Shown in pieces: positions 43,528-58,326 of a stretch of DNA of 64,000 nt (position 1 is the first letter of the stretch; each line of letters begins with the position of its first letter). The DNA is taken from positions 12,276,001 through 12,340,000 of the forward strand of contig NC_088795.1 of assembly GCF_011386835.1 (NCBI RefSeq). The letters are read 5' to 3'. Below the pieces are notes generated by a model. The model was given only the letters and a program-made list of their open reading frames with translations. It was not told the DNA's origin and made no database searches. This DNA comes from Chrysemys picta bellii. Its lineage: Eukaryota. The translations under genes and the position numbers were made by a program.

Positions 43528-43714
43528 TAGTTCTTCGTTTGTTTGCCTCTTGACTACATTCCTGCAGTATGACAATACAATATTGTCCACAGTATGTAAA
43601 TTAGGGGTATTCAAAAAGGGAAATGACACAAAATGAAACCAAGATATTGGTCATTTTGAACAAGAACAAATTTCATGCTTAATATGCAGACATTTGTTCT
43701 TACTCATCACATAC

Positions 43715-43899
43715 CTACAGCAGCAGCTGCCTTCATCTTATTTCTTACATATGTATGACTGGCTGGGTTGTCTCCTACTAAAATGACAGTGAGATGAGGT
43801 CTCTTGTTCCCAAGGGACATCCATGATTCTACATCCCTCTGGACTTCTTTATAGACTTGTTTAGCAAGCTGAGTCCCTGAGATAATGGTTGCTTCATCA
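43715..43899 (-). CDS. MTHFD2L: MTHFD2L exon 2 (185 nt)
   Basis: tttttatag|T GAT GAA..GCT GTA G|gtatg; DEATIISGTQLAKQVYKEVQRDVESWMSLGNKRPHLTVILVGDNPASHTYVRNKMKAAAAV (YxxxK cyclohydrolase motif). Confidence 0.97.
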
Positions 43900-44324
43900 C
43901 TATAAAAACAAAGATACAAATTCAAGCGTTAAAAACCTACCATCTTAAGTAAAAAATTTCACAATCAAAATACCTAAAATACTCAGATCTCCTGTATTAT
44001 ATATTTACAAATGTTGAGGCCAATGGAGATCGACCTGTTGTTTGAATGATGAATAAATGATAGTATGAAGTTCAAGTGTGGCATGCCAGCTGCTTTCTAA
44101 ACGATAAAGAAGTGGAAGGTCCTGCGTCCAGAGAACCCCCACACATTCCAAAGAGCAGCTCAGACACCTGTGTGGCACTGTTGCCCCAATTTCCTCAGAC
44201 ACACAGCTGGCATCATGTTAATGCCCAGAAGCCCATGGATTGGGGGCAGAGTCTGGGGATAAAGTCCAAGGGAATCCGATTGGAGATATCCGCCCTTAAA
44301 ACCTTCTTGTAGCTCTTCCCCCGC

Positions 44325-44348: not shown

Positions 44349-44516
44349 AAGTAGGGGATACTGCTGCCCCACACTTAGTTCAAGGCTATAATTGTCCTGT
44401 TATTTACAATATAATCCCTTTGATCATATCTAGGTGGTGCCATTTCTTTGCTTTCCCAGGGCCTAGTTGAGATAAGGCGTTTGGTGAGAACAAGCTGATG
44501 GAAGTTCAGTCTAGAT

Positions 44517-44814
44517 CAGGGATCGGCAACCTTTGCTCCGCGGCCCGCCAGGGTAAGCCCCCTGGCGAGCCAGGATGGCTTGTTTACCTGCAGCGTCCAC
44601 AGGTTCAGCCGACCGTGGCTCCCACTGGCCACGGTTCGCCGCTCCAGACGCATGGGACTCCCTCGGCCCGCACCGCTTCCCGCAGCCCCCATTGGCCTGG
44701 AGCAACGAACCGCGGCAGGTAAACCAATCTGCAGACGCGGCAGGTAAACAAACCAGCCCAGCCCGCCAGGGGGCTTACCCTGGCAGGCCACATGCCAAAG
44801 GTTGTCGAACTCTG
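44517..44814. mobile_element. hAT-Charlie MITE
   Basis: TIRs CAGGGATCGGCAACCTTT / AAAGGTTGTCGAACTCTG; TSD GTCTAGAT / ATCTAGAT. Confidence 0.9.
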
Positions 44815-45416
44815 ATCTAGATAAAAGTGGGGATCTTATTTCATAGGGTGAAGCAACTCAAGGAACTGAAATCCGACAGGGGTTGGGAATGCTCTACTTA
44901 CAAGAACAATTAGTTCACCAGTTTCTCCAAATTTATAAAGGTAAACATTGTTGATGCAAGATGAGAAGAATTTTAAAAAATAAAAAATAAAGCTAGGTCA
45001 CAGAGCAGTTGGAGTAGATAATTCTAAAGTCTCTCCTAAACAGGTAAGGCCTTGTCTACACTACAAAGTTTTGTCGACAAAAGTGATGTCAACACTCAAA
45101 AATTGACATAATAAAAATAGGAAAGTCATGTTCACACTCGCTCCCTCTGTCGGCAGAGCACGTCCACAGTGGGGGCACTATCATCGACACGGTGAGCAAT
45201 GCATTGTGGGTACCTATCCTACAGTCCAGCTCAACACTTTCTGTTGCTAGGTGTTGTGGGATGGCAGAGCGGATTGCGGCACATCTTGGGACTGGGCTCA
45301 ATGTCCCATGGTGCATTGCTTTCTGTCCCAGCACTTCATGGGCTTCCAGCTTTCTTTCACAGCATTTTTGCAATGGCCCTTCTTTGCTGTGCACCCTGGC
45401 ATCTTTGTGAGAAGGG

Positions 45417-46804
45417 ATGGATCCCGTCCTGCTCTCCTATGCTCTGTTAACTGCCATGAAGACATCACGGATGACAGTGCAGTTAACTGTGAAGTTCCTA
45501 ACTGAAGAAGACTCACAGACACCTGACATGCTGCGCGATATGGATAAGAGCAACTTTAGATTGCTTTTGGCACTCACAGAACAGCTGCATAGGGTAGACT
45601 GTTGCTTTTTAGCTTGAGAAACAAGCACTGAATGATGGGATCGTAGCGTCATGCAGATGTGGGATCATGAGCAGTGGCTACAGAACTTTCGGATGCGGAA
45701 AGCCACCTTCCTGGAATTGCGTGCAGAGCTTGTCCAAGCGCTTCGGTGCAAAGACACCAGAATGAGAGCTGCCCTATTGGTAGAAAAACATGTGGCAATC
45801 GCTGTGTGGAAGCTACTGGATGGTCGCAAATCAATGTGGAGTGGGGAAGTTGACCATTGGGGCTGCATTAATGCAAATGCATAGGGCAATAAATCACATC
45901 TTGCTATGAAGGACCGTGACTCTGGGAAATGTGTGTGAAATAATGGACAACTTTGCAGAAATGGGTTTCCCTAACTGTGGAGGGGCGATAGATGGCACAC
46001 ATACACCTCTACCTCAATAGAGCGCTGTCCTTGGGAGCCAAAAAGTCTTATCGCGTTATAGGTGAAACCGTGTTATATTGAACTTGCTTTGATCCACCGG
46101 AGTGCCCCCCACCCCTAAGCACTGCTTTACCGCGTTATATCAGGTGGCGTTATATCGAGGTAGCGGTGTATTCCAAATTTGGCACCAGACCACCTTGTGA
46201 TGGAGTACATCAAAAGAAAGGGGTACTTCTCCATGGCACTGCAGGCGCTTGTGGATCACTGTGGGTGTTTCACTGACATCAACACAGGGTGGTCCGGGAA
46301 GGTGCATGATGCACGCATCTTCAGGAACACCAGCCTGTACAGAAAGAAACAAGTGGGGACTTTCTTTCCAAACCAGATTACATTGGGGGTTGTTGAAATG
46401 CCCATAGTGATCCTGGGAGACCTGGCGTACCCCTTACAGCCATGGCTCATGAAACCTTACACAGGACACCTGGACAGCAGTAAGGAGTGGTTCAACAACA
46501 GGTTGAGTAGGTGCCGGATGACAGTTGAATGTGCCTTTGGCAGATTAAAGGCGCACTGGCGATGCCTTTATGGCAGGTAAGACCTCAATGAGGATAATAT
46601 TCCCATGGTCATAGCAGCGTGCTGTCCTTGCATAATCTCTGTGACGCTAAGGGTGAAAGGTTTGCTCAGGGGTGGAATGTTGAGGCAGACCGCTTGGCTG
46701 CTAATTTTGAGCAGCCAGATACCAGGACTATCAGAAGAGCCCAGAGGGGGGCAATTCAGATCAGGGAGGCTTTGAGGCAACACTTTGAAAATGAGAACCA
46801 GTGA
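45417..46804 (+). pseudogene. H1 Harbinger (HARBI1-like) DDE transposase, disrupted
   Basis: MDPVLL..QWLQNFRMRKATF..IDGTH|..NRKGYFSM-like..GKVHDARIF..LGDLAYPL..VECAFGRLK..LHNLC..ENENQ*. Several stops, a deletion near 45817 and a MITE insertion. Confidence 0.95.
46004..46168. mobile_element. TA-target MITE inserted into the H1 transposase
   Basis: CACCTCTACC / GGTAGCGGTG TIRs with TA TSD; same family as 43289; removal restores IDGTHIP. Confidence 0.9.
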
Positions 46805-47061
46805 TGTATATCTCTGTGATTGGTGCTTCAATGTTACATTACACATAGTTTTCCTAGGAAGCAATGTATTTGGGGCCCTACATTCCAATAAGCACATGAT
46901 TAACATGCCTGTGCATGTATTGGTAGTGCCTGCTATCTCAATTTGTAGGAAACAGAGATGAGTTACCATTCAAAAATTTTGCTTTTATTGTACAAGAAAC
47001 AACACACACCAACATACAGAGATGGTTGGTGGGAAAGGAGGTACCAGGGAAGGGCAGATTT

Positions 47062-48685
47062 TCACAGCTGTGTGCAAGTCCAGCTACCATTGTGAAAGTT
47101 GTCCGAGGGGGTGGAGTGAAGGGGAAACCGAGAAGTCCCGGAAAGCAGAAAGGACTGTGTGGGTGGAGTTGGGGGGGGGCATGGAAAAGAGTTCTGAATG
47201 TGCTGCAGGGGAGGGCGGGCTCAGATCTGCTCAGTCTGCAGCATTATTAAGGACTTCAGCATCTGCATTTGCTCCTCCATTACTTTAATCATCCACTTAG
47301 TTGCATCCTTAAACTCCTGATTCTCTTTTCTGTCCTGCTGTTTGGCTTCCCAGCACTCCTTGCATTCCCTTTTCTCTGCATTGGAGCAGTGCAGTACCTC
47401 CTGGAACATGTCTTATTTGCTGTGTCTTGGGCGCTTTCTTATCTGGCAGAGACGCTCCGCCGGGGTGCGTGGGGTGTTCCTGAAGGCCACATCTGCCGAA
47501 GCACAAGGGACAATGCATAGACGTGGGATTGTTAAATTCACACTCATGCATTGAAAAATTTCAGTTAAATACACTTTTTGCGACGTAACAATCACTTTCT
47601 CATTGACCCTTGGCAGGCACAAATCTCTGCGAACACCCAAAGCATGGTGAGTGTTGGTGGGGTTGGGGAAAGCGCTCCACATGGGGAAAAGAGCACACAC
47701 TCTGCAAGGGTTGTGGTGCAACCTACTAGGGAAAAAATTCTAAAATTTTCCCACACTTCTCCACAGACAGGGGTCATTGTAGCAGCTCTCTCACTGCTAA
47801 GGGTAAGCAAGGAAATGAGGGTACATCTATTCCATGCTCGTGGCTTCCACCCTACTCCCTACACTGCTTGCCTATGTTCCGCTTTGGTCCCTGCACAAGT
47901 GATCGCCAAATGGCACGGGAAAGTTTCCTACAATGGGGGAAAGGAACAAAGCTGCTCTGCCACGGAACTTTCGGCAGAGGATTGCCAAGTACCTCCAGGA
48001 AACTTTCCTGGAGATCTCTCTGGAGGATTCCTGTGAGATCACGGCATGCATCAACACTCTATTCCGCCGTAATGATTAGCTACACAGGGAAATGTCCATC
48101 ATCCAGAAACACAGACAGCCTCCCACATTTCTATACCCTGAACCCACCTCTGCACTACACAAATCACAGCCATCTCCTCTCCTGCGTCTTGCTCACCAGA
48201 GAGCAACTGCTGAGACTGGCTAGACACCTCTGGAGTGGAGAACAGTTCTTGGCTGCCTGCCCCACCGGGAGCTCCACATTGTCATCTAACTCCATCTCTT
48301 CATCAATAACTTTGTCCTCTTTCCACCACCTCCAGGCCTGCTGAAGTATCTACAGGGACCTTGGCAGCGGAGGTGGGGTTGCCCCCGAGGATAGCATCCA
48401 GATCCTTATAGAACCGGCAGGTCTTAGGTGAAGCACCGGAGTGACGGTTTGCTTCCCTCACCTTATAGTACGCCTGCCTCAACTCCCTTATCTTCGCTCT
48501 GCACTGCAGTGTTCCTGATCATGGCCCTTTTTTCACAAGCCTCAAGAAATGTGCCCGTAGGTATCCCAATTCCTATGGCTCAAGCGCAGCTGTGACTGCA
48601 CAGCCTCCTCGCCGCATATCCTGATCAGATCCAACAGCTCCACAGTGGTCCAAGCGGGAGAGTGTTTGGTGTGATAACCTGACAT
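47062..48685 (-). pseudogene. H1 Myb/SANT-like (MSANTD/NAIF1-type) gene, spliced, disrupted
   Basis: ATG at 48685 after cttcccag|gtaacc; SPAWTTVELLDLI..GEEAVQSQLR..KIRELRQAY..TCRFYKDLDAILGG. 5'UTR intron 48692-48791, coding intron 47493-48196 (gtgag..cttcggcag), last exon KRPRHSK*DMFQEV..QL*. Confidence 0.9.
47644..48079 (+). pseudogene. Third Harbinger gene in H1: BEN-like domain nested antisense in the Myb intron
   Basis: ATG|gtgagt (47644-47652), 120-nt intron ending ..cttctccacag (47766), exon 47767-48079 = TGVIVAALSLLRVSKEMRVHLFHARGFHPTPYTACLCSALVPAQVIAKWHGKVSYNGG/RNKAALPRNFRQRIAKYLQETFLEISLEDSCEITACINTLFRRND*. One extra A at ~47941. 43/90 aa identical to the H2 counterpart. Confidence 0.75.
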
Positions 48686-51600
48686 GGTTACCTGGGAAGA
48701 TGCGATGAGACCTCTCCATGCTGAGCCAGCAGGAAATAGAATTTCAAAAATCCCTGGGGCTTCTAAGGGGGAGGGACAGATGGTTGTTTACCTGGCTGCA
48801 GGACAGTGGAGTTCAAGCTGATGACCAAAGTAGTCACGATGGGCATTGTGGGACACCTCCTGGAGGCCAATTAAAGTGATGAAATCAAGCATGGTGTCTA
48901 CACTGGCACTTTGTCAAGAAAAATTTAGAGAAAAAAGACATACGTCTCTCGTTGGGGTGGTTGTATTTGGTCTCCAAAACCGGGCATTTTTCCCGACAAA
49001 AGTCGCATCGCAGTGTGTATGCATTCACTGTTTTGGTGACAAAAGGCAGTTTTTGATCGACAAAACTTAGTAGCGTAGACAAGGCCTAAGACTCAGAGGC
49101 AGAGTAAGTGGGTTCTAAACACTGTATTGTTAGTAGCCAGCATGCTATATATTGTTAGAGATACAGACCGAAGAAACGTTGAGGATTTTTGTACCATTTC
49201 ACAGCTTCACTCTCCCTCTTTCACACATCCAACAACTAGAAGTCAGACAACTTCTATAACTATGAATAACATTTTAAAAAATAAAATCTCTCTCTCTTAG
49301 AAGGGGGTTAGCACTTTCAAAGCTGAAGTAAAGTATTACAGTTCATAAAGACAGCAACTCTCCAACCTTTAAAGCTCAATCCCGTACATTTTACGTAGCC
49401 AAAACTCTCACTGATTTCAAAAGGTGCATGAGGAAAATGGGATCTGCATTTTATAAGCAGGAGCAACATTAAAAACTTGTCCATCATGCCATTCAGTTGT
49501 CCCCGATTGTAATAGAAATGCTTCATTTTATATACAATATTGCCTGTCCTACAATTACCTTGTAGTAAATTAGTCATCAAAATTGTCAGATCACGAAGCT
49601 GAGGTTATAGATAATATTAGCAATTCTAGAGAGGTCAGTCCCACATTGTTTAAGTATCTAGTCATCTTAGTTTGTTCTTTTCCTTATTTAGGGTCTTTCT
49701 TCTACAGTGTTTCACATTTGGGCCAGCTGGTTACAGGTTACGTTATCCAGATCAGGCACATGTTAATCTTTTATGTTTATATTCCAGCCTATTGCTTTTT
49801 CACAGAAAAGCTAAAGTGTGTGACTTTCAGATATTAGACGATTCATTTTTGCTGTGCCAGGCAATGCAACCCTTAAATATATAAAGCAATAAAATTGTTA
49901 ATCAACGAGAAAACTTGACTCATTTATCTGGTTTGGAACAAGATGTTCTGCATGACCCAATCAATCCAAGACCACCTTTATATGTAAAAATGAAACAAAA
50001 TCTGAAATTATAACCTCTATTTTTGCTTAAGTTGCATCAGGCCAGGTCTGCCTTCCTAGCAAAATATCAAACTGTCCCCTCCTTACACCAATCTCTTCTT
50101 ACAACCCTACTTTATTATTTCAGAAATCTGTGCACCCTCTTTAATATTAATGTGGGCTGGTGTCCAAATGGACCTCAGAACGAAAATTAACTGTGGTCTC
50201 CCCAGACAGATACAGGGGGCCAAACTAATCCACCAAATACAGAACTGCAGGGAAACACAACCCATATTTGTTTCTAACTAAAGAATCTTTCACTCTTGTC
50301 AGGTTGCCACTGTAAAATTACTGTAGCTCTGGGGAAAAAAAGAGCATAGACTCTTGGAACCACTTTCAACCAAGAATTCCAAAATTCGACTTCCCACATC
50401 TCTGGGCAACAGAAATTATAGGAACTTTCATTCTCAAACTCTCTAAAATCTGCCACTATTCACTCCCCTTTATATATATATAGTCTTTAAGTAGTAAGTA
50501 CATGTTGAACTGTACTTGAAAATAGGAGCATGGACTATGGAGTACAGCTTAATAGGCAGCCTGCTCGAAGCACCGCTAAGCAAGTGAGCAGTTGAATTCC
50601 TCACTAGCTGCAGTTTTTGAGTAAACTAACTTTTTCCTCTCGGTCCTATTATAACTACCTTTAACCTTAACTGCCACTCTTATGCTGCTGATACTTAACT
50701 GAACTTGTATTTCAGCTGCTTCTTTACCAACTGCTTTCTGTTGGCTTTCTTGTCTCAAAGCGAGTTTGCAGCTCTCTCTCAACATCCCTCAGTTAACTGT
50801 CTGAAAATGGAAGTCATTCACTTGGACAAGGGCATCCTCAGGAGCAATTCCATCTTCTCCATCCAGATCTCCCATTTGACTCTCCTGTCTGTACCCACTC
50901 GGTTTTCCTTGACTGTGTTTTCCAGTCTCATCTGTCTGATATATGTAAATGTGCATATTAGCTCTGCGCCAACACTGCCTGCATACAATATAACCCTGGT
51001 TGGACTACCCCTCCTCTGAAGTTGTGTGTTTATCTCCTCGCATATTTCAACTCCTTGTCTTTTCACACATTCCAAGGAAAATCAAGGAAGCCAAGCATGA
51101 TAAATATATATATTTAATATTGTTTCTAGACAGGAATATTATATCTTTCTATATTAAATTATGTCTATTATGTCTGACTGCATTTGTATAGAGAACGTAA
51201 ATCTTACTTTCAGAGGATTAAATAAGATATGTATGAAGTACCAGTGGACATGTCTACTCTTCCTGCGAAACACAGAACTGCACAGTGGAGGATACCAGTG
51301 TTCTAGTCTTACACACAGCATCAAAAGAACTGCTGGTGGTCCACATATCCATGACACAAGGATCAGAATCCTATAGGAAGCTTGCTCCCACTTTTCTAGA
51401 TAGGAAGCAGGACTATGAGCAAGACACCCTCCCACTCACACATCTTGCTTTCTTCTTCTGAAAGAGAACTATAGTTTTGTGTCTATACATACGCACATGC
51501 ACACACTATGCAAGGGACCAAGCCCTGCTTTGAACCGAGTTCAATTTAGAATAAGTGAATTATATTGAGTAACAAGAATAACTTTGTTTAGAAAGTATTT

Positions 51601-52559: not shown

Positions 52560-53420
52560 GCTCACAAAAGAATGTAGCTTTTTCAATGTATTTTAACAAC
52601 CTAATGGAGGGTTGTTCCTACCTAGTGGTGTATTTTGCTGAAATCGTTGACATTCAAAATATCCATGTTTTAAGCAAGAAAGATAATCTTCAAGAAGACC
52701 TAAACACATTAAGGGAGCGAACTATCAAACAGCTGATAGATTTTAATATGAGCAAATTTAAGAGCCGAGATGGATTGCTTAAAAACTACAATACAAAAAC
52801 TATAACATGTAAGGTAGAATACTGGAATATCCTGGCAAAGAAAGGAAGGTTTCAAGTTAGCACGGATATGAAAATGGACACAATTTGTTCAGTTAAAGCA
52901 CAGAAGATCAAAAGGATTCCAGGCTACATTAGAAGATGTAAATAAACATAAGCAAAACAAGAAAAATTATACCATTGTAGAAGGCCATGGCAAAGCCCAT
53001 CTGGAATACCATGCCCGGTTTCAGGCATATTACTTCCACAACTATGGCCTTGGCTACACTGGCGCTGTATAGCACTGCAACTTGCTGCGCTCAGGGGTGT
53101 AAAAACGCCCCCGCCCTGAGCGCAATGAGCATAGCGCTGTAAAGTGTCAGTGTAATCAGAGCCTGCAGCGCTGCACACTCGCTCGCAGTGCTGCAAGCGA
53201 TTCCCCCCGGAGAGGCGGAGTACATACAGCGCTGTGAAGTCCCGAGTGTAGCCAAGGCCTATGTAGAAATTCTGGAGAAAAGTCCAAAGAAGATGAAAAC
53301 TCAAACAGTAGTGACGGCCTTATCTATGATAGGCTTCTATAAATTGAAAATAAGGCCATTGGGGGAGAGAGATCTTATTGCGGTTTGTTTATGGAAATGG
53401 TCTTTACAACCCAAGAAGCA
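52560..53420 (+). mobile_element. Ancient CR1/L3 RT fragment
   Basis: ORF 52586-52945 is a decayed IFINDL..FADD..LQ.DL..L..FN..K pattern (YFNNL..FAEI..LQEDLNTL..FNMSK), followed by AKPHLEY-like sequence; interrupted by the 53046 MITE. Confidence 0.65.
53046..53259. mobile_element. Harbinger MITE with H2-type termini
   Basis: Perfect TIR GGCCTTGGCTACACT at both ends, TAT TSD, multiple CAGCGCTG subterminal palindromes. Confidence 0.92.
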
Positions 53421-54091
53421 TGCCACTGCAGATTCCCACGATATGGGGAAAGTAGAAATGTTAAAAAATATTAAATTTTGTATAGATGAAAAGGTTTCAG
53501 CCCTTTTTCTTGTGAAGATAAACTTTAAAATGCAAATCAATGTAAAGTAATCATTAGGCCTTTTGGGAATGGAGCATTAAAGGGTATTTTCACACTTCGT
53601 ATGTAAAAAGAGCCTGTTAAGTTGTGGGTATCACCTCCCTTCAAAAACAAACCTAATCTTGTTAAACCTTCCCAAAACCCTTAGGCCTTGGCTACACTTG
53701 TGAGTTACAGCGCTGTAAAGGCTCCCCCAGCGCTGTAACGCACTCCCCATCCACACTGGCAAGGCATTTGCAGCGCTCTATCTCCGTGGTTGCAGCGCTG
53801 CATGTACTCCACCTCCCCGAGAGGAATAGCGAGTATTGCGCTGCCGCTGCAGCGCTGCGGTGCCAGTATGGCCACCCAATGCGCTGTGAATGGCCTCCAG
53901 AATTATTCGACAGTATCCCACAACGCCTGTTCTAGCCACTCTGGTCATCAGTTCAAACTCTACTGCCCTGGCCTCAGGTAACCAACCATGTGACCCACCC
54001 TTTACATTCCCGGGGAATTTTAAAAATCCCCTTCCTGTTTGCTCAGCCCGGCATGGCGTGGAGTGCTATCAGCGAATCTTTCCAGGTGACC

Positions 54092-55650
54092 ATGCCTCCA
54101 CGCGCCAAGCGAGCCCCAGCATGGAGCAATGGCGAGTTGCTGGACCTCATCAGTGTTTGGGGGGGAGGAAGCTGTATAGTCCCAGCTGCGCTCCAGCCGT
54201 AGGAATTACGATACCTTCGGGAAGGTATCAAAGGACATGATGGAAAGGGGCCATGACCGGGACGCCCTGCAGTGCAGGATTAAAGTGAAGGAGCTCTGGA
54301 GTGCCTACCGCAAAGCCTGCGATGCAAACGGCCGCTCGGGTGCTCCCCCTGCGACCTGCCGATTCTACAAAGAGCTGGATGCGATACTTGGGGTTAACCC
54401 CACCTCCACTCCGAGTACCACCATGGACGCTTCAGAGCCTGGGGGGGAGGAAAGGAGAAGGAGGAGGAGGAAAATGGGAGTGATGGTGGTGGGCCGGATG
54501 GAGACACCCTGGAATCCCTGGAGCCAATGCAGCCAGGAGCTCTTCTCGAGCCAGGAGGAAAGTAGCCAATCGCAGCAGCCAGTACTTGGTGGAGGACAAA
54601 CAGAAGAGCAGGTTCCCGGTAAGCAGGGGTTTTTTTCGGGAAGGAAATTTTCGGTGCGGGCTCTTTGGGAGAGGAGGGTTAGGCATACCTAGATGCGGAA
54701 TAATGCATTGATGTGGTTTATCACATTGCGGTAATCGGCCTCGGTAATCTCCTTGAATGTCTCATCCAGAACGTGAGCAATGCACTTGCGCAGGTTTATC
54801 GGGAGAGCCACCGTAGTCCTTGTCCCAGCCAGGCTAACGTGTCTGCGCCACTGTGCCGTGAGGGGCAGGGGGACCATTGCTGCACACAGGCAAGCTACAT
54901 ATGGGCCAGGGTGGAAGCTGCATTGCAGTAGAAGACCCTCCCTTGCTTCCCAGGTCACCCTCAGCTATTATGCTGTTGTGTAGACCCTGTGTGTTTTCTA
55001 CTCCTTAAGTGTGGGGGGAATCATTACTCTGTCTGGTATAAACAATGCTGCCTCTGTTAAATGTTGCATTTTGCCTATACAGCTGCATCAACCTTGAGAC
55101 CTCAGCCATCCCTCTTATCGCCTGCTCAGAGACTGCAAAGACTCAGGAAGAGACCGCGAAAAAGCAAATAAGACATGCTGCAAGAAGTGATGCGGCAATC
55201 TATTAAAGAGAATGAGAAAGCACAGAACTGGAGGGAGAGAGAAAGCAGGATCCGCCAGGAAAACGCAGCGCACCGGCGGCAAAGCACTGCGCACCGGCAG
55301 CAAAGCACTGATAGGCTCATAAGCATCCTGGAGCGCCAAGCAGACGCTATCCAGGAGCTGGTAGCCATGCAGAAAGAGGAGCAGAACCGCAAACGCAAAC
55401 GCCACCCACCCCACAGCCCTTGTCCCAAAACTCTTTCCGTTGTGCCCCACTGTCACCTCCAACCCACTTTCCCCAACTTCTGTGTTCTTCACGCCACCCG
55501 CTGCCTCCAACACCAGTATCTTCACCACCCAGCCCTGAAAACCACGACCCTTACCCTCTGCACTCAACCCCCATCACCATGCAGTATAGCTGTCCTGAAG
55601 TGCAGCACTCACTGCACAGCACACCAGACAGGACATACGCGAATCTGTGA
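54092..55650 (+). pseudogene. H2 Myb/SANT-like gene, spliced, lightly disrupted
   Basis: MPPRAKRAPAWSNGELLDLISVWG/EEAV*SQLRSSRRNY..QCRIKVKEL..TCRFYKELDAILG. 5'UTR intron 53978-54085, coding intron 54619-55082 (gtaag..ctatacag), last exon KRPRKSK*DMLQEV..TYANL*. +1 G at ~54160. Confidence 0.92.
54689..54964 (-). CDS. Third Harbinger gene in H2: BEN-like exon nested antisense in the Myb intron
   Basis: Uninterrupted frame LRVTWEAREGLLLQCSFHPGPYVACLCAAMVPLPLTAQWRRHVSLAGTRTTVALPINLRKCIAHVLDETFKEITEADYRNVINHINALFRI*, gaplessly homologous to H1 47797-48067. No ATG or clear acceptor is retained upstream. Confidence 0.75.
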   Translation of the reverse strand: MRVTWEAREGLLLQCSFHPGPYVACLCAAMVPLPLTAQWRRHVSLAGTRTTVALPINLRKCIAHVLDETFKEITEADYRNVINHINALFRI

Positions 55651-55687
55651 TTGTACCGTTCCCCACTCCACCCCCTTGTTTCTTTTC

Positions 55688-55725
55688 AATAAATGGATTC
55701 TTTGACTTTGAAAACATTCTTTATT
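55688..55725. terminator. Back-to-back polyadenylation signals between the convergent H2 genes
   Basis: AATAAA (+) at 55688-55693 after the Myb stop, and AATAAA (-) at 55720-55725 after the transposase stop. Confidence 0.65.
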
Positions 55726-55847
55726 ATTGCATAAAGTAAAAGACTCCTTAGCCCAGGAAATAAACAGGCACTGCAAGTCTGCTTAGCAAACACCGATTCC
55801 TAAAGATTGGAACTACTGCACTTCACTCCCGTGCACGGCACCAGATA

Positions 55848-57100
55848 TCACTGTTGGTTTTCAGCCTCAAATCGCTCCCTCGAGGCATCCCTAATCCTTG
55901 CAGCCCCGCGCTGGGCCCCTGTAATACCCCTGCTCTCTGACTGTGCAAATTCAGCCTCCAGGTGTTGAACCTCAGAGGTCCATGCCTGAGTGAAGCTTTC
56001 ACCCTTCCCTTCACAAATATTATGGAGGGCACAGCATGTGGATATAACCACGGGGATGCTGTTTTCGGCCAAGTCCAGCTTCCCATACGGAGATCGCCAG
56101 CGGGCCTTTAAATGGCCAAAGGCACTCTCCACAGTCATTCGGCACCGGCTCAGCCTGTAGTTGAACCGTTCCTTGCTGCTGTCAAGGCTCCTGTGTAGGG
56201 TTTCATGAGCCACGGCATTAACGGGTAAGCGGGATCTCCAAGGATCACAATGGGCATTTCAACTTCCCCAACTGTGATCTTCCGCTCTGGGAAAAAAGTC
56301 CCGGCCTGCATCTTCCTGAACAGCCAAGTGTTCTGAAAGATGTGTGCATCATGCACCTTTCCAGGCCAGCCTGTGTACATGTCAATGAAACGCCCACGGT
56401 GATCCACAAGCGCCTGGAAAACCATAGAGAAATACCCCTTCCGATTAACGTACTCGGATCCTAGGTGGGGTGGTGCCAGAATAGGAATGTGCGTCCCATC
56501 TATCGCCCCTCCACAGTTAGGGAACCCCATTTGTGCAAAGCCATCCACTATTTCCTGCACGTTACCCAGAGTCACGGTTCTTCTGAGTAGGATGCGATTA
56601 ATGGCCTTGCAAACTTGTATCAACACGATTCCAACCGTCGACTTTCCCACTCCAAACTGGTTTGCGACCGACCAGTAGCTATCTGGAGTTGCCAGCTTCC
56701 AGATTGCAATAGCCACCCGCTTCTCCACTGGCAGGGCAGCTCTCAATCTCGTGTCCTTGCGCCGCAGGGTAGGGGCAAGCTCCTCACACAGTCCCATGAA
56801 AGTGGCTTTTCTCATCCAAAAGTTCTGCAGCCACTGCTCGTCATCCCAGACTTCCATGACGATGCGATCCCACCCCTCGGTGCTTGTTTCCTGAGCCCAA
56901 AAGCAACATTCCACGGTGCTGAGCATGTCCGTGAATGCCACAAGCAATTTCGTGTCGTATGCGTTATGCGGCTCGATAGCATCGTCAGACTCCTCACCCT
57001 CACTCTCACTGTCACTTTGGATCTTAAGGAATAGTTCGACAACCAAACGTGACGTGCTGGCGAGACTCGTCAGCATACGCCTCAGCAGTTCGGACTCCAT
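55848..57100 (-). pseudogene. H2 Harbinger DDE transposase, one frameshift
   Basis: MESELL..WLQNFWMRKATF..IDGTHIP..NRKGYFSM..GKVHDAHIF..LGDPAYPL..KPYT(G)/SLDSSKERFN..VESAFGHLKARW..LHNIC..ENQQ*. About 417 aa if a 1-nt deletion at ~56190 is repaired. Acceptor ..ctgtgcag at 57120 precedes the ATG. Confidence 0.95.
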
Positions 57101-58326
57101 TTCCCGCAGACAGATCGCGCTGCACAGAAACGGTTGAAAGATGGTGCCAAAGGTGGACGGAAACAAAGGGATTTCTGGGATGCGAAGCGATGCATCACGG
57201 GGCATTGGGACAGGACCCAGAATCCCCCTTCCCACGCCCCCTTCCCACAACCCACGGCGCCAGAATGGGAAAAGGTGCTCTGTGGGATAGCTGCCCATAA
57301 TGCACCGCTCCCAATAGCGCTGCAATTGCCGCAAATGTGGCCACGACCGTGCGCTGGGCAGCTGTCAGTGTGGACAGACTGCAGCGCTTTCCCTACTCAG
57401 CTGCACGCAGTCAGGTTTAACTCACAGCGCTGTACATCTGCGAGTGTAGCCAAGGCCTTGGGCTGGTCCCTTTGTGAATGCATACATTTTGGAGGGGTAG
57501 GAAAATAAATAGTTTGCCAGTCTACCCAAAATTGCTAAAGCTGGATGGGTCTGCTTAAACTCAGCAACCAAAACAAAAAGACACATGGACATGTGTAGAA
57601 AACAAACAAAAGCATGCACTAAAGCAGTCTTGCACATTTTTTAAGGAAATGTAACAACCCATACACCGAATCTTCTCTCTCACCTTTACCAAGCTGGTAA
57701 GGCTAATATAGAATATATTGTGGTCAGGCATGTAAAATAAGTCCTAAGTGAGCTGACAAGCCAAATTTTTCAGGCTGCGTTAAATACATAGAGAACATAT
57801 TCCATCGTAGAGGTTATTCAAGTGTTCTGAATTTTTAACCCCCAAATGTAATTGCAGAAAGCCCCTTAATCAGGTTTGAAAAAAAAGAAATAAAAGGATT
57901 ACTAGAAAACCAGTGTCTTATTGGGGTATAAAGAGCATTATATGCTATGATGATTATTTACATGTAGGGGATTAAATTTTAAAATGATCGAAAATTCCTG
58001 TTTGTCCCCAAATTGGTTTTTCCATGTATTCTTTAATTTATAAATTTAAATTATTTTAAGGATGCGGAAATTATTTTATTAGCAGTTACAGAGATGAAAC
58101 GGATCTTTATCAGAAAACATATGTGACTTTTGTAAATTTCACTTTGTAAGGTAGGTAACAGTGAGCTAATAACAATATTTTATTTAAAACATTATTTGTA
58201 CCAAGGAAAATGCAAGTGAACTATAACCCTACACATGGCTCACTTTTAAGTACTTCTCACTGAGTACTTCTGCAGAAACAGATGGTAGCTATTTGATATG
58301 CATCTCTATTTTAAAGGAAACTCTCA

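What the first reader, a model, noticed from the sequence alone, without database searches (positions are those of the whole stretch)
45048..49086. Model: one promoter, two products (transposase or BEN) opposed to a convergent Myb gene
SEEN: in both elements the transposase ATG is preceded by an acceptor-like site (ctttctttcacag at 45362 in H1; tttctgtgcag at 57120 in H2), implying a non-coding first exon. The H1 BEN micro-exon also begins with an acceptor (47616) and has no obvious promoter of its own. INFERENCE: the leader exon could splice either to the transposase exon or, skipping the transposase and the antisense Myb last exon, to the BEN micro-exon. Any BEN transcript must overlap the Myb transcript in antisense. 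That makes a compact three-component circuit (transposase + Myb + BEN) with built-in mutual interference. BEN could be a transposase cofactor, a methylation-sensitive reader of element ends, or an anti-silencing factor.
Basis: inference. Interest (0 to 1): 0.7.

Follow-up and report, generated by a model that had tools for sequence, protein, structure and literature searches.

The report
Turtle Harbinger transposon, nested BEN gene
Two dead copies of a turtle Harbinger jumping gene carry a real third, BEN-fold gene hidden inside the intron of their Myb gene, but the proposed "one promoter, two spliced products" scheme rests on splice-like motifs that are no better than chance and are not conserved in sister copies.

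Summary
H1 (45048-49086) is a dead PIF/Harbinger copy with a TAA duplication, 36-nt inverted ends, a + strand transposase and a convergent two-exon Myb gene. It also holds a small + strand gene nested in the Myb intron.

I confirmed independently that this third gene is real. It is conserved in at least 5 diverged turtle lineages, with between-lineage dN/dS of 0.13-0.36. It folds as a BEN domain (Z 11.8 to BEND3 BEN4). The scan had already noted this gene on this same DNA (s1-325559, s1-325556).

The model's specific evidence fails:
- The acceptor-like sites before the transposase ATG (45362, 57120) are of a kind seen 4-8 times per kb per strand.
- They sit at non-homologous positions and are absent from sister copies.
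- No leader donor is conserved.
- The AG at 47616 recurs at the homologous position in one other lineage only.

What is conserved everywhere is ATG|GTRAG (CTG in one lineage), a 120-450 nt intron, a strong acceptor and an exon of about 100 codons. Most copies also keep a poly(A) signal inside the Myb intron. The transposase has its own poly(A) signal.

Annotated turtle gene models splice host exons, or the transposase N-terminus, into the BEN exon, so splicing over the transposase is plausible. The promoter remains unknown. I favour a nested unit with its own start (0.45) over the leader model (0.15).

The parts
45045..45047 (.). Target-site duplication TAA (left); the right copy is at 49087-49089
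45048..45083 (+). H1 5' terminal inverted repeat (GGCCTTGTCTACAC...)
   Evidence: (I8: 36 nt, 89% complementary)
45084..45416 (+). H1 leader. It contains the acceptor-like site ending at 45362, a donor-like site near 45190 and a TTGTGGGA motif at 45254. None of the splice-like sites is conserved.
45417..46804 (+). H1 transposase gene remnant (DDE_Tnp_4). It is broken by stops and by an unrelated repeat of about 165 nt inserted at 46002-46168.
   Evidence: (joints 46001->46169)
46981..46986 (-). Myb poly(A) signal AATAAA on the - strand, tail-to-tail with the transposase 3' end
47221..47492 (-). H1 Myb gene, last exon (coding part; stop at 47221-47223)
   Evidence: joint 47493->48173 in three runs
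47493..48167 (-). H1 Myb intron (GT..AG on the - strand). It contains the whole BEN gene on the opposite strand.
47617..47646 (+). Its 3' end, ATG 47644-47646 followed by donor GTGAGT 47647-47652, is conserved in all lineages. Its 5' boundary (AG at 47616) is not.
47647..47766 (+). BEN intron, 120 nt, GTGAGT...ccacag
47767..48079 (+). BEN main exon (BEN-fold domain; stop TAG 48077-48079). H1 has a private 1-nt insertion near 47940 that shifts the frame.
   Evidence: (table 4, 47940)
48168..48685 (-). H1 Myb gene, first exon (Myb_DNA-bind_4 type), broken by stops and frameshifts
49051..49086 (-). H1 3' terminal inverted repeat
53685..57457 (-). H2, a second copy from a diverged lineage, 72-76% identical to H1 in the alignable genes. 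Transposase 57100->55848 with one frameshift. Myb exon 1 54092-54618 (+), Myb intron 54619-55082, Myb exon 2 55083-55705 (+).
54689..54958 (-). H2 BEN exon, open for 89 codons. A deletion of about 196 nt between 54965 and 55003 removed its micro-exon, intron, acceptor and first codons.

Best explanation
H1 and H2 are dead copies of a three-gene Harbinger transposon. The third gene encodes a BEN-fold protein of about 100 residues. It is a compact two-exon unit lying wholly inside the Myb intron, on the transposase strand:
- a short first exon whose last three bases are the start codon;
- an intron of 120-450 nt;
- one coding exon with a strong acceptor;
- in better-preserved relatives, a poly(A) signal just before the antisense Myb exon-1 donor.

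I think it is most likely transcribed as its own nested unit, starting within about 150 nt upstream of the ATG. This step is inferred, not shown.

Because the coding exon has a strong acceptor, it also captures donors from any upstream exon on the same strand, whether transposase N-terminal or host exons. Turtle genome annotations record such chimeric messages. The transposase and Myb units end tail-to-tail at their own poly(A) signals.

Shown here: the anatomy, its conservation, the selection on the ORF and the BEN fold. Inferred: the position of the promoter.
For: Harbinger identity: DDE_Tnp_4 and Myb_DNA-bind_4 hits, TAA duplication and 36-nt inverted ends.

BEN gene:
- The profile search finds 64 representative clusters.
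- dN/dS between lineages is 0.13-0.36, against about 1-2 in the shifted frames.
- The AlphaFold model has pLDDT 95.4.
- The nine best structural matches are all BEN domains (BEND3, BANP, BEND6; Z 11.8 down to 7.3), and the next match is Z 3.3.

Own start: ATG|GTRAG followed by a YAG acceptor is present in H1, L001, L002, L003, L004, L005 and L007. L008 keeps the donor with CTG instead, and its main exon begins with ATG. The flanking intron sequence is unalignable between lineages.

Own end: AATAAA or ATTAAA lies 32-71 nt after the BEN stop and before the antisense Myb donor in 6 of 9 copies.

Separate transposase end: AATAAA lies 106-168 nt after the transposase stop in 5 of 7 copies.

No conserved acceptor at the 5' side of the first exon, and no conserved donor or acceptor in the leader.

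The Myb intron is removed in contigs of three runs.
Against: No transcription start site was observed, and no core-promoter motif is conserved upstream of the ATG across lineages. A TATA-like TTATAT occurs about 70 nt upstream only in L003/L004, and TCTCGCGAGA occurs only in L008.

H1 and L005 share CCCTTGGCAG|GCACA, which could be a true acceptor in that lineage.

The RefSeq models (Malaclemys LOC128825970 X1/X2, Malaclemys LOC128826488, Mauremys SLC6A9-like) reach the BEN exon from upstream exons without using the first exon. The start-codon exon is therefore not obligatory.

The runs laid were contigs of uncertain RNA status and cannot show starts.
Confidence: 0.45

Rival explanations
1. 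A single promoter at the element's 5' end makes a non-coding leader exon. This exon is spliced either to the transposase exon or, skipping the transposase and the antisense Myb last exon, to the BEN micro-exon.
For: Acceptor-like strings exist at 45362, 57120 and 47616. The 47616 AG is shared by H1 and L005. The BEN exon is demonstrably able to accept distant upstream donors across a whole transposase in annotated models. No conserved BEN promoter motif was found.
Against: Sites of this quality occur 4-8 times per kb per strand. The two pre-ATG sites are non-homologous and are absent in L001 and L002, and no leader donor is conserved. In H2 the only good donor is 33 nt from the element's end. 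The AG at 47616 is missing in L007, and the AG before L001's ATG is missing in L002. The transposase has its own AATAAA before the BEN gene. No such joint was listed in four runs (63 further joints were not shown).
Confidence: 0.15
2. Alternative splicing from a donor inside the transposase coding region (after about 95-135 codons, ..IVLQ|GT) directly to the BEN main exon. This would make a fusion of the transposase N-terminus and BEN as a regular second product of the transposase promoter.
For: RefSeq Malaclemys LOC128825970 X1/X2 join ..DRIVLQ to the BEN exon in frame (L004 8367->9522). A Natator CCDC90B isoform uses the same ..IVLQ| point as a donor of a cassette exon. Other annotations also join a transposase N-terminus to BEN (P0003, P0011, P0018, P0044, P0077, P0087). 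Both sites are phase 0.
Against: The junction differs in almost every model (after DID, DIMV, AVGQ, LQKQ, TLGN, IVLQ), as expected when predictors bridge broken ORFs. The one RefSeq case is an internally deleted copy of 3.3 kb. The GT is simply the Val codon of a conserved QVW, and H1 has lost it (CAG|ATG). This route leaves the ATG|GT first exon, conserved in all lineages, unexplained.
Confidence: 0.2
3. BEN has no dedicated promoter. It is expressed only when an outside transcript (host gene or neighbouring repeat) reads into the element and splices to its acceptor, as a built-in exon trap.
For: Many annotated host isoforms end in the BEN exon: PFKFB4 in Trachemys and Chrysemys, CDK6, RAB3C, TEDC1, ST13 and SLC6A9-like. 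LOC128826488 starts in a repeat outside the element.
Against: A conserved in-element start codon and donor would be pointless under this model. Purifying selection between lineages implies a reliable supply of the protein in active elements wherever they insert.
Confidence: 0.1

Closest known systems
Canonical vertebrate PIF/Harbinger elements (e.g. Harbinger3_DR of zebrafish), which have two genes
   Same: DDE_Tnp_4 transposase plus a Myb/SANT-like DNA-binding protein, a 3-bp TAA duplication, and short inverted ends with subterminal repeats.
   Different: These turtle lineages carry a third, selected gene with a BEN fold, nested antisense in the Myb intron. Three Harbinger papers in the held library (PMC9179366, PMC9392472 and the abstract of PMC13668399) treat the elements as encoding two proteins. 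A full-text search found no paper linking Harbinger elements to a BEN gene.
En/Spm (CACTA) of maize, which makes TnpA and TnpD from one promoter by alternative splicing (from my own knowledge)
   Different: Here no conserved leader donor or acceptor exists. The transposase has its own poly(A) signal, and BEN has its own start codon and poly(A) signal.
BEN domains of BEND3 (BEN4, 7v9i/7w27), BANP (7yug) and BEND6 (7yul)
   Same: The same fold over 83-90 residues at 2.1-3.0 A, Z 8-11.8, and a G-x-x-K-x-ALP-x-N motif pattern in the family alignment.
   Different: Pfam BEN (PF10523) is not reached by the turtle proteins. The best score is a distant relative at 20.8 bits against a cutoff of 23.2. 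A profile search of PDB sequences finds no BEN chain. DNA binding and target are untested.
Host-transposon chimeric genes made by exon capture, such as SETMAR (from my own knowledge)
   Same: Upstream host exons splice into a transposon-borne coding exon that supplies the C-terminus and the 3' end.
   Different: The captured exon here is the accessory BEN gene, not the transposase. The events are recurrent, young and seen only as annotated isoforms.

Membership tests
PIF/Harbinger DNA transposon | DDE transposase of the DDE_Tnp_4 / Plant_tran type | tested here: met
   PF13359 at E 5.5e-24 for H1 and 6.7e-18 plus 2e-09 for H2
PIF/Harbinger DNA transposon | Second gene encoding a Myb/SANT-like DNA-binding protein | tested here: met
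   PF13837 at 28 bits (cutoff 27) for H2 exon 1. The H1 homologue was read on the - strand.
PIF/Harbinger DNA transposon | 3-bp target-site duplication (TWA) and terminal inverted repeats | tested here: met
   TAA on both sides of H1, with 36-nt inverted repeats 89% complementary. H2 has CAA and TAA.
BEN domain (PF10523) | Sequence match above Pfam's gathering score | tested here: not met
   No hit for the window ORFs or the turtle proteins. Only the distant relative P0039 scores, at 20.8 bits against 23.2.
BEN domain (PF10523) | BEN fold: a helical domain with a short beta hairpin, superposable on solved BEN domains | tested here: met
   Model pLDDT 95.4. Z 11.8, 2.1 A over 88 residues to 7v9i. 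The top nine matches are all BEN, and the next is Z 3.3.
BEN domain (PF10523) | Sequence-specific DNA binding | not testable with these tools
   Alignment A2 of four leaders: the sites are non-homologous and absent in L001 and L002. The chance rate is 4-8 per kb per strand.
   No such joint appears among those listed in four runs, but the runs are contigs of uncertain RNA status and 63 joints were not shown. Annotated models join other upstream exons to BEN.

The most novel reading that the evidence does not exclude
The strong acceptor of the BEN exon is an evolved feature, not an accident. It lets the element make BEN from whatever promoter lies upstream, whether its own transposase promoter (giving an N-terminus-BEN fusion that could compete with or guide the transposase) or a host gene's promoter. 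These Harbingers would then act as natural gene traps that keep generating host-BEN fusion proteins. That would be a possible birth route for vertebrate BEN-domain genes.
Probability: 0.15. Interest if true: 0.75.

Novelty: new variant of a known kind. Interest (0 to 1): 0.45.

Why it matters
Harbinger elements are usually described as two-gene transposons. A selected third gene with a DNA-binding fold, nested antisense in the Myb intron, changes that picture and invites tests of what BEN does at the element's CpG-rich ends.

How BEN is expressed decides whether it is an independent regulator, a splice-controlled alternative to the transposase, or a trap for host transcripts. The recurrent host isoforms ending in the BEN exon also matter for annotation, because they may be real chimeric messages or systematic artefacts in turtle gene sets.

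Tried and rejected
- Pfam on all window ORFs gave no BEN hit, and likewise for relatives.
- A profile search of PDB sequences found no BEN chain. The protein atlas gave only chance-level hits. Foldseek E-values were weak (best 0.53), although its top hit was a BEN domain. Only the structural re-alignment was clear.
- RNA evidence was weak. No listed holder run is on record as RNA. Four 'RNA?' runs were laid as short contigs from many paralogous copies. They showed the Myb intron removed but nothing for the leader model, and they cannot show starts or strand.
- I looked for a conserved internal promoter motif. TCTCGCGAGA occurs only in L008, and the window shows chance level. TATA-like strings are lineage-specific.
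- Look-ups of P0025 and P0090 were not on record.
- A word search with H1-like BEN proteins found no further RefSeq model for that lineage.
- The literature search found no paper linking Harbinger elements to a BEN gene.
- I rejected the many transposase-BEN fusion predictions as strong evidence, because their junctions differ from model to model.
The H1 BEN exon was searched in two pieces by reference, and the fold used the natural Chelonia protein P0001. Runs of N in L001 and L007 were left as they are.
Full report
**What is in the window**

H1 (45048-49086) is flanked by TAA on both sides. It ends in 36-nt inverted repeats that are 89% complementary.

On the + strand it carries a DDE_Tnp_4 transposase. 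The homologous start codon is 45417 and the stop is 46802-46804. The gene is broken by stops and by an unrelated insertion of about 165 nt at 46002-46168, which other copies lack (joints 46001->46169).

On the - strand lies a two-exon Myb/SANT gene. Exon 1 is 48685->48168, the intron is 48167->47493, and exon 2 is 47492->47221. Contigs from three runs join 47493 to about 48168-48173, which matches removal of exactly this intron. Exon 1 is broken by stops and frameshifts, so all three genes of H1 are dead.

H2 (57457->53685, - strand) is a second copy from a different lineage, 72-76% identical to H1 where alignable. Its layout is the same.

A host exon of the tetrahydrofolate dehydrogenase/cyclohydrolase type lies at 43707-43925 on the - strand. 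Both elements probably sit in an intron of that gene.

**The third gene is real and has a BEN fold**

I tested this independently. The scan had already noted the gene on this same DNA (s1-325556, s1-325559).

- The H2 ORF (54958->54689) has close relatives annotated in Chelonia mydas.
- A profile search found 64 representative clusters, reaching geckos and zebrafish.
- Six ORFs from four to five lineages give between-lineage dN/dS of 0.13-0.36. The same alignment read in the two shifted frames gives about 1-2. Within lineages the ratio is 0.5-0.8, as expected for copies decaying after insertion.
- Pfam's BEN model is not reached, and a sequence profile finds no BEN chain in the PDB.
- The AlphaFold model of the natural Chelonia protein P0001, built with a 39-sequence alignment, has pLDDT 95.4.
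- Its nine best structural matches are all BEN domains (BEND3 BEN4 at Z 11.8, 2.1 A over 88 residues; then BANP and BEND6). The next match is Z 3.3.

**Anatomy of the BEN gene**

In H1 the start codon is 47644-47646, immediately followed by the donor GTGAGT. An intron of 120 nt ends in ccacag at 47766. The coding exon runs 47767-48079. A private 1-nt insertion near 47940 shifts the frame, and other copies lack that letter (table 4).

The same ATG|GTRAG, an intron of 120-450 nt and a pyrimidine-rich YAG acceptor are present in H1, L001, L002, L003, L004, L005 and L007. In L008 the donor is kept with CTG in place of ATG, and the main exon itself begins with ATG. The surrounding intron sequence is too diverged for blastn to align between H1 and H2, so these signals have been held by selection.

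H2 has lost about 196 nt here (between 54965 and 55003). That deletion removed the first exon, the intron and the acceptor.

In 6 of 9 copies an AATAAA or ATTAAA lies 32-71 nt after the BEN stop, just before the antisense Myb exon-1 donor. H1 and H2 have lost it. The whole BEN unit therefore fits inside the Myb intron. It overlaps the Myb pre-mRNA but not the mature Myb message.

The strings are present at 45362, 57120 and 47616. Several results count against them:

- Acceptor-like sites of that quality occur 3.9-8.3 times per kb per strand in this window.
- In an alignment of four leaders (H1, H2 and two Chelonia copies of the H2 lineage), the two sites fall in different columns. L001 and L002 read CTG where H2 has CAG, and the H2 lineage reads GGCACC where H1 has CACAG.
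- The only good donor-like sites in the leaders are likewise private to one copy.
- H1's site is 55 nt upstream of the homologous ATG (45417), not next to it.
- The AG at 47616 is shared with L005 but absent at the same place in L007. In the H2 family, L001 has a different AG 13 nt before the ATG, and L002 lacks it.
- The transposase has its own AATAAA 106-168 nt after its stop in 5 of 7 copies, followed within about 35 nt by the Myb poly(A) signal on the other strand. The transposase and Myb units thus end tail to tail before the BEN gene.

**What supports part of the model**

Public annotations contain many gene models in which an upstream exon is spliced into the BEN coding exon.

- In Mauremys, a host exon of an SLC6A9-like gene is joined across 8.5 kb to the BEN exon of a complete Harbinger. 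The join skips the element's transposase and its antisense Myb last exon.
- Malaclemys LOC128826488 starts in a repeat 1.2 kb outside the element and does the same.
- RefSeq isoforms of PFKFB4 (Trachemys and Chrysemys), CDK6, RAB3C, TEDC1 and ST13 end in a BEN exon.
- Malaclemys LOC128825970 joins the transposase N-terminus (..DRIVLQ) in frame to the BEN exon, on an internally deleted copy.
- A Natator CCDC90B isoform uses the same point as a donor.

I could not see the read support behind these models. The many other transposase-BEN fusions in ab initio gene sets use a different junction each time, which suggests predictor bridging. All these routes bypass the conserved start-codon exon.

**Direct RNA evidence**

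No listed holder run is on record as RNA. The four runs I laid are short contigs drawn from many paralogous copies. They show the Myb intron removed and other copies lacking the H1 insertion. They show no listed joint from the leader to 45362, 47617 or 47767. Sixty-three further joints were not shown, and contigs cannot show starts or strand. This test neither supports nor excludes the model.

**Verdict**

A shared non-coding leader is not supported, and the claimed antisense overlap applies only to the Myb pre-mRNA.

My estimates for how BEN is expressed:

| Explanation | Probability |
|---|---|
| Nested two-exon unit with its own start, whose acceptor also captures upstream donors | 0.45 |
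| Transposase N-terminus-BEN fusion route | 0.20 |
| Pure read-in capture | 0.10 |

The pieces were searched by reference. Runs of N in fetched loci were left alone. No step needed referral.

Noticed in passing
window 53685-53860 and 57316-57457 (H2 ends); 45069-45082, 48994-49001, 49058-49065 (H1 ends): Each lineage has its own CpG-containing short repeat confined to the element ends. All 8 AGCGCT in H2 lie within 175 nt of an end and none lies in the 3.4-kb interior. All 4 CGACAAAA/TTTTGTCG in H1 lie within 100 nt of an end. These are candidate binding sites for Myb or BEN.
   Followed up: partly
window 45254 and 48846 (H1); H2 positions 208 and 3535 from its 5' end: TTGTGGGA occurs once near each end, in the same orientation. 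It sits at almost the same distance (207/208 nt) from the 5' end in both diverged lineages. It may be a conserved protein-binding site shared by the lineages.
   Followed up: partly
window 46002-46168: An unrelated, very abundant short repeat is inserted in the H1 transposase. Read depth there is in the thousands, and other Harbinger copies lack it (joints 46001->46169).
   Followed up: partly
window 53237-53261 (and leftwards): A further H2-type terminal repeat faces away from H2's own end 420 nt to the right. It is probably the end of another H2-family copy or a MITE lying to the left.
   Followed up: no
window 43707-43925 (- strand): A host coding exon with a THF_DHG_CYH domain (PF00763, E 1.7e-14), of the MTHFD2/MTHFD2L type. 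Both Harbinger copies probably lie in an intron of this gene, H2 in the gene's orientation.
   Followed up: partly
L008 21903-21912: A perfect TCTCGCGAGA, which from my own knowledge is the CGCG element bound by the BEN-domain factor BANP. It lies about 130 nt upstream of the donor of the BEN first exon in a Mauremys Harbinger. It was not found in the other seven loci or in the window's elements.
   Followed up: partly
proteins P0019/P0074, P0023, P0024, P0026, P0090, P0036 (turtle RefSeq): Annotated isoforms of PFKFB4 (two species), CDK6, TEDC1, RAB3C, ST13 and an SLC6A9-like gene end in a Harbinger BEN exon. This is either recurrent exon capture or a recurrent annotation artefact.
   Followed up: partly
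protein P0099 (Natator depressus CCDC90B isoform X2); P0146 (Chrysemys MTHFD1L isoform X7): A stretch of the Harbinger transposase N-terminus (..RAKRRQ...WWDRIVLQ) is annotated as a cassette exon or terminal exon of host genes. It uses the same ..IVLQ| boundary.
   Followed up: no
window 44510-44821: A 96-nt inverted repeat pair, 81% complementary, just left of H1, with very high contig depth. It is another repeat family.
   Followed up: no
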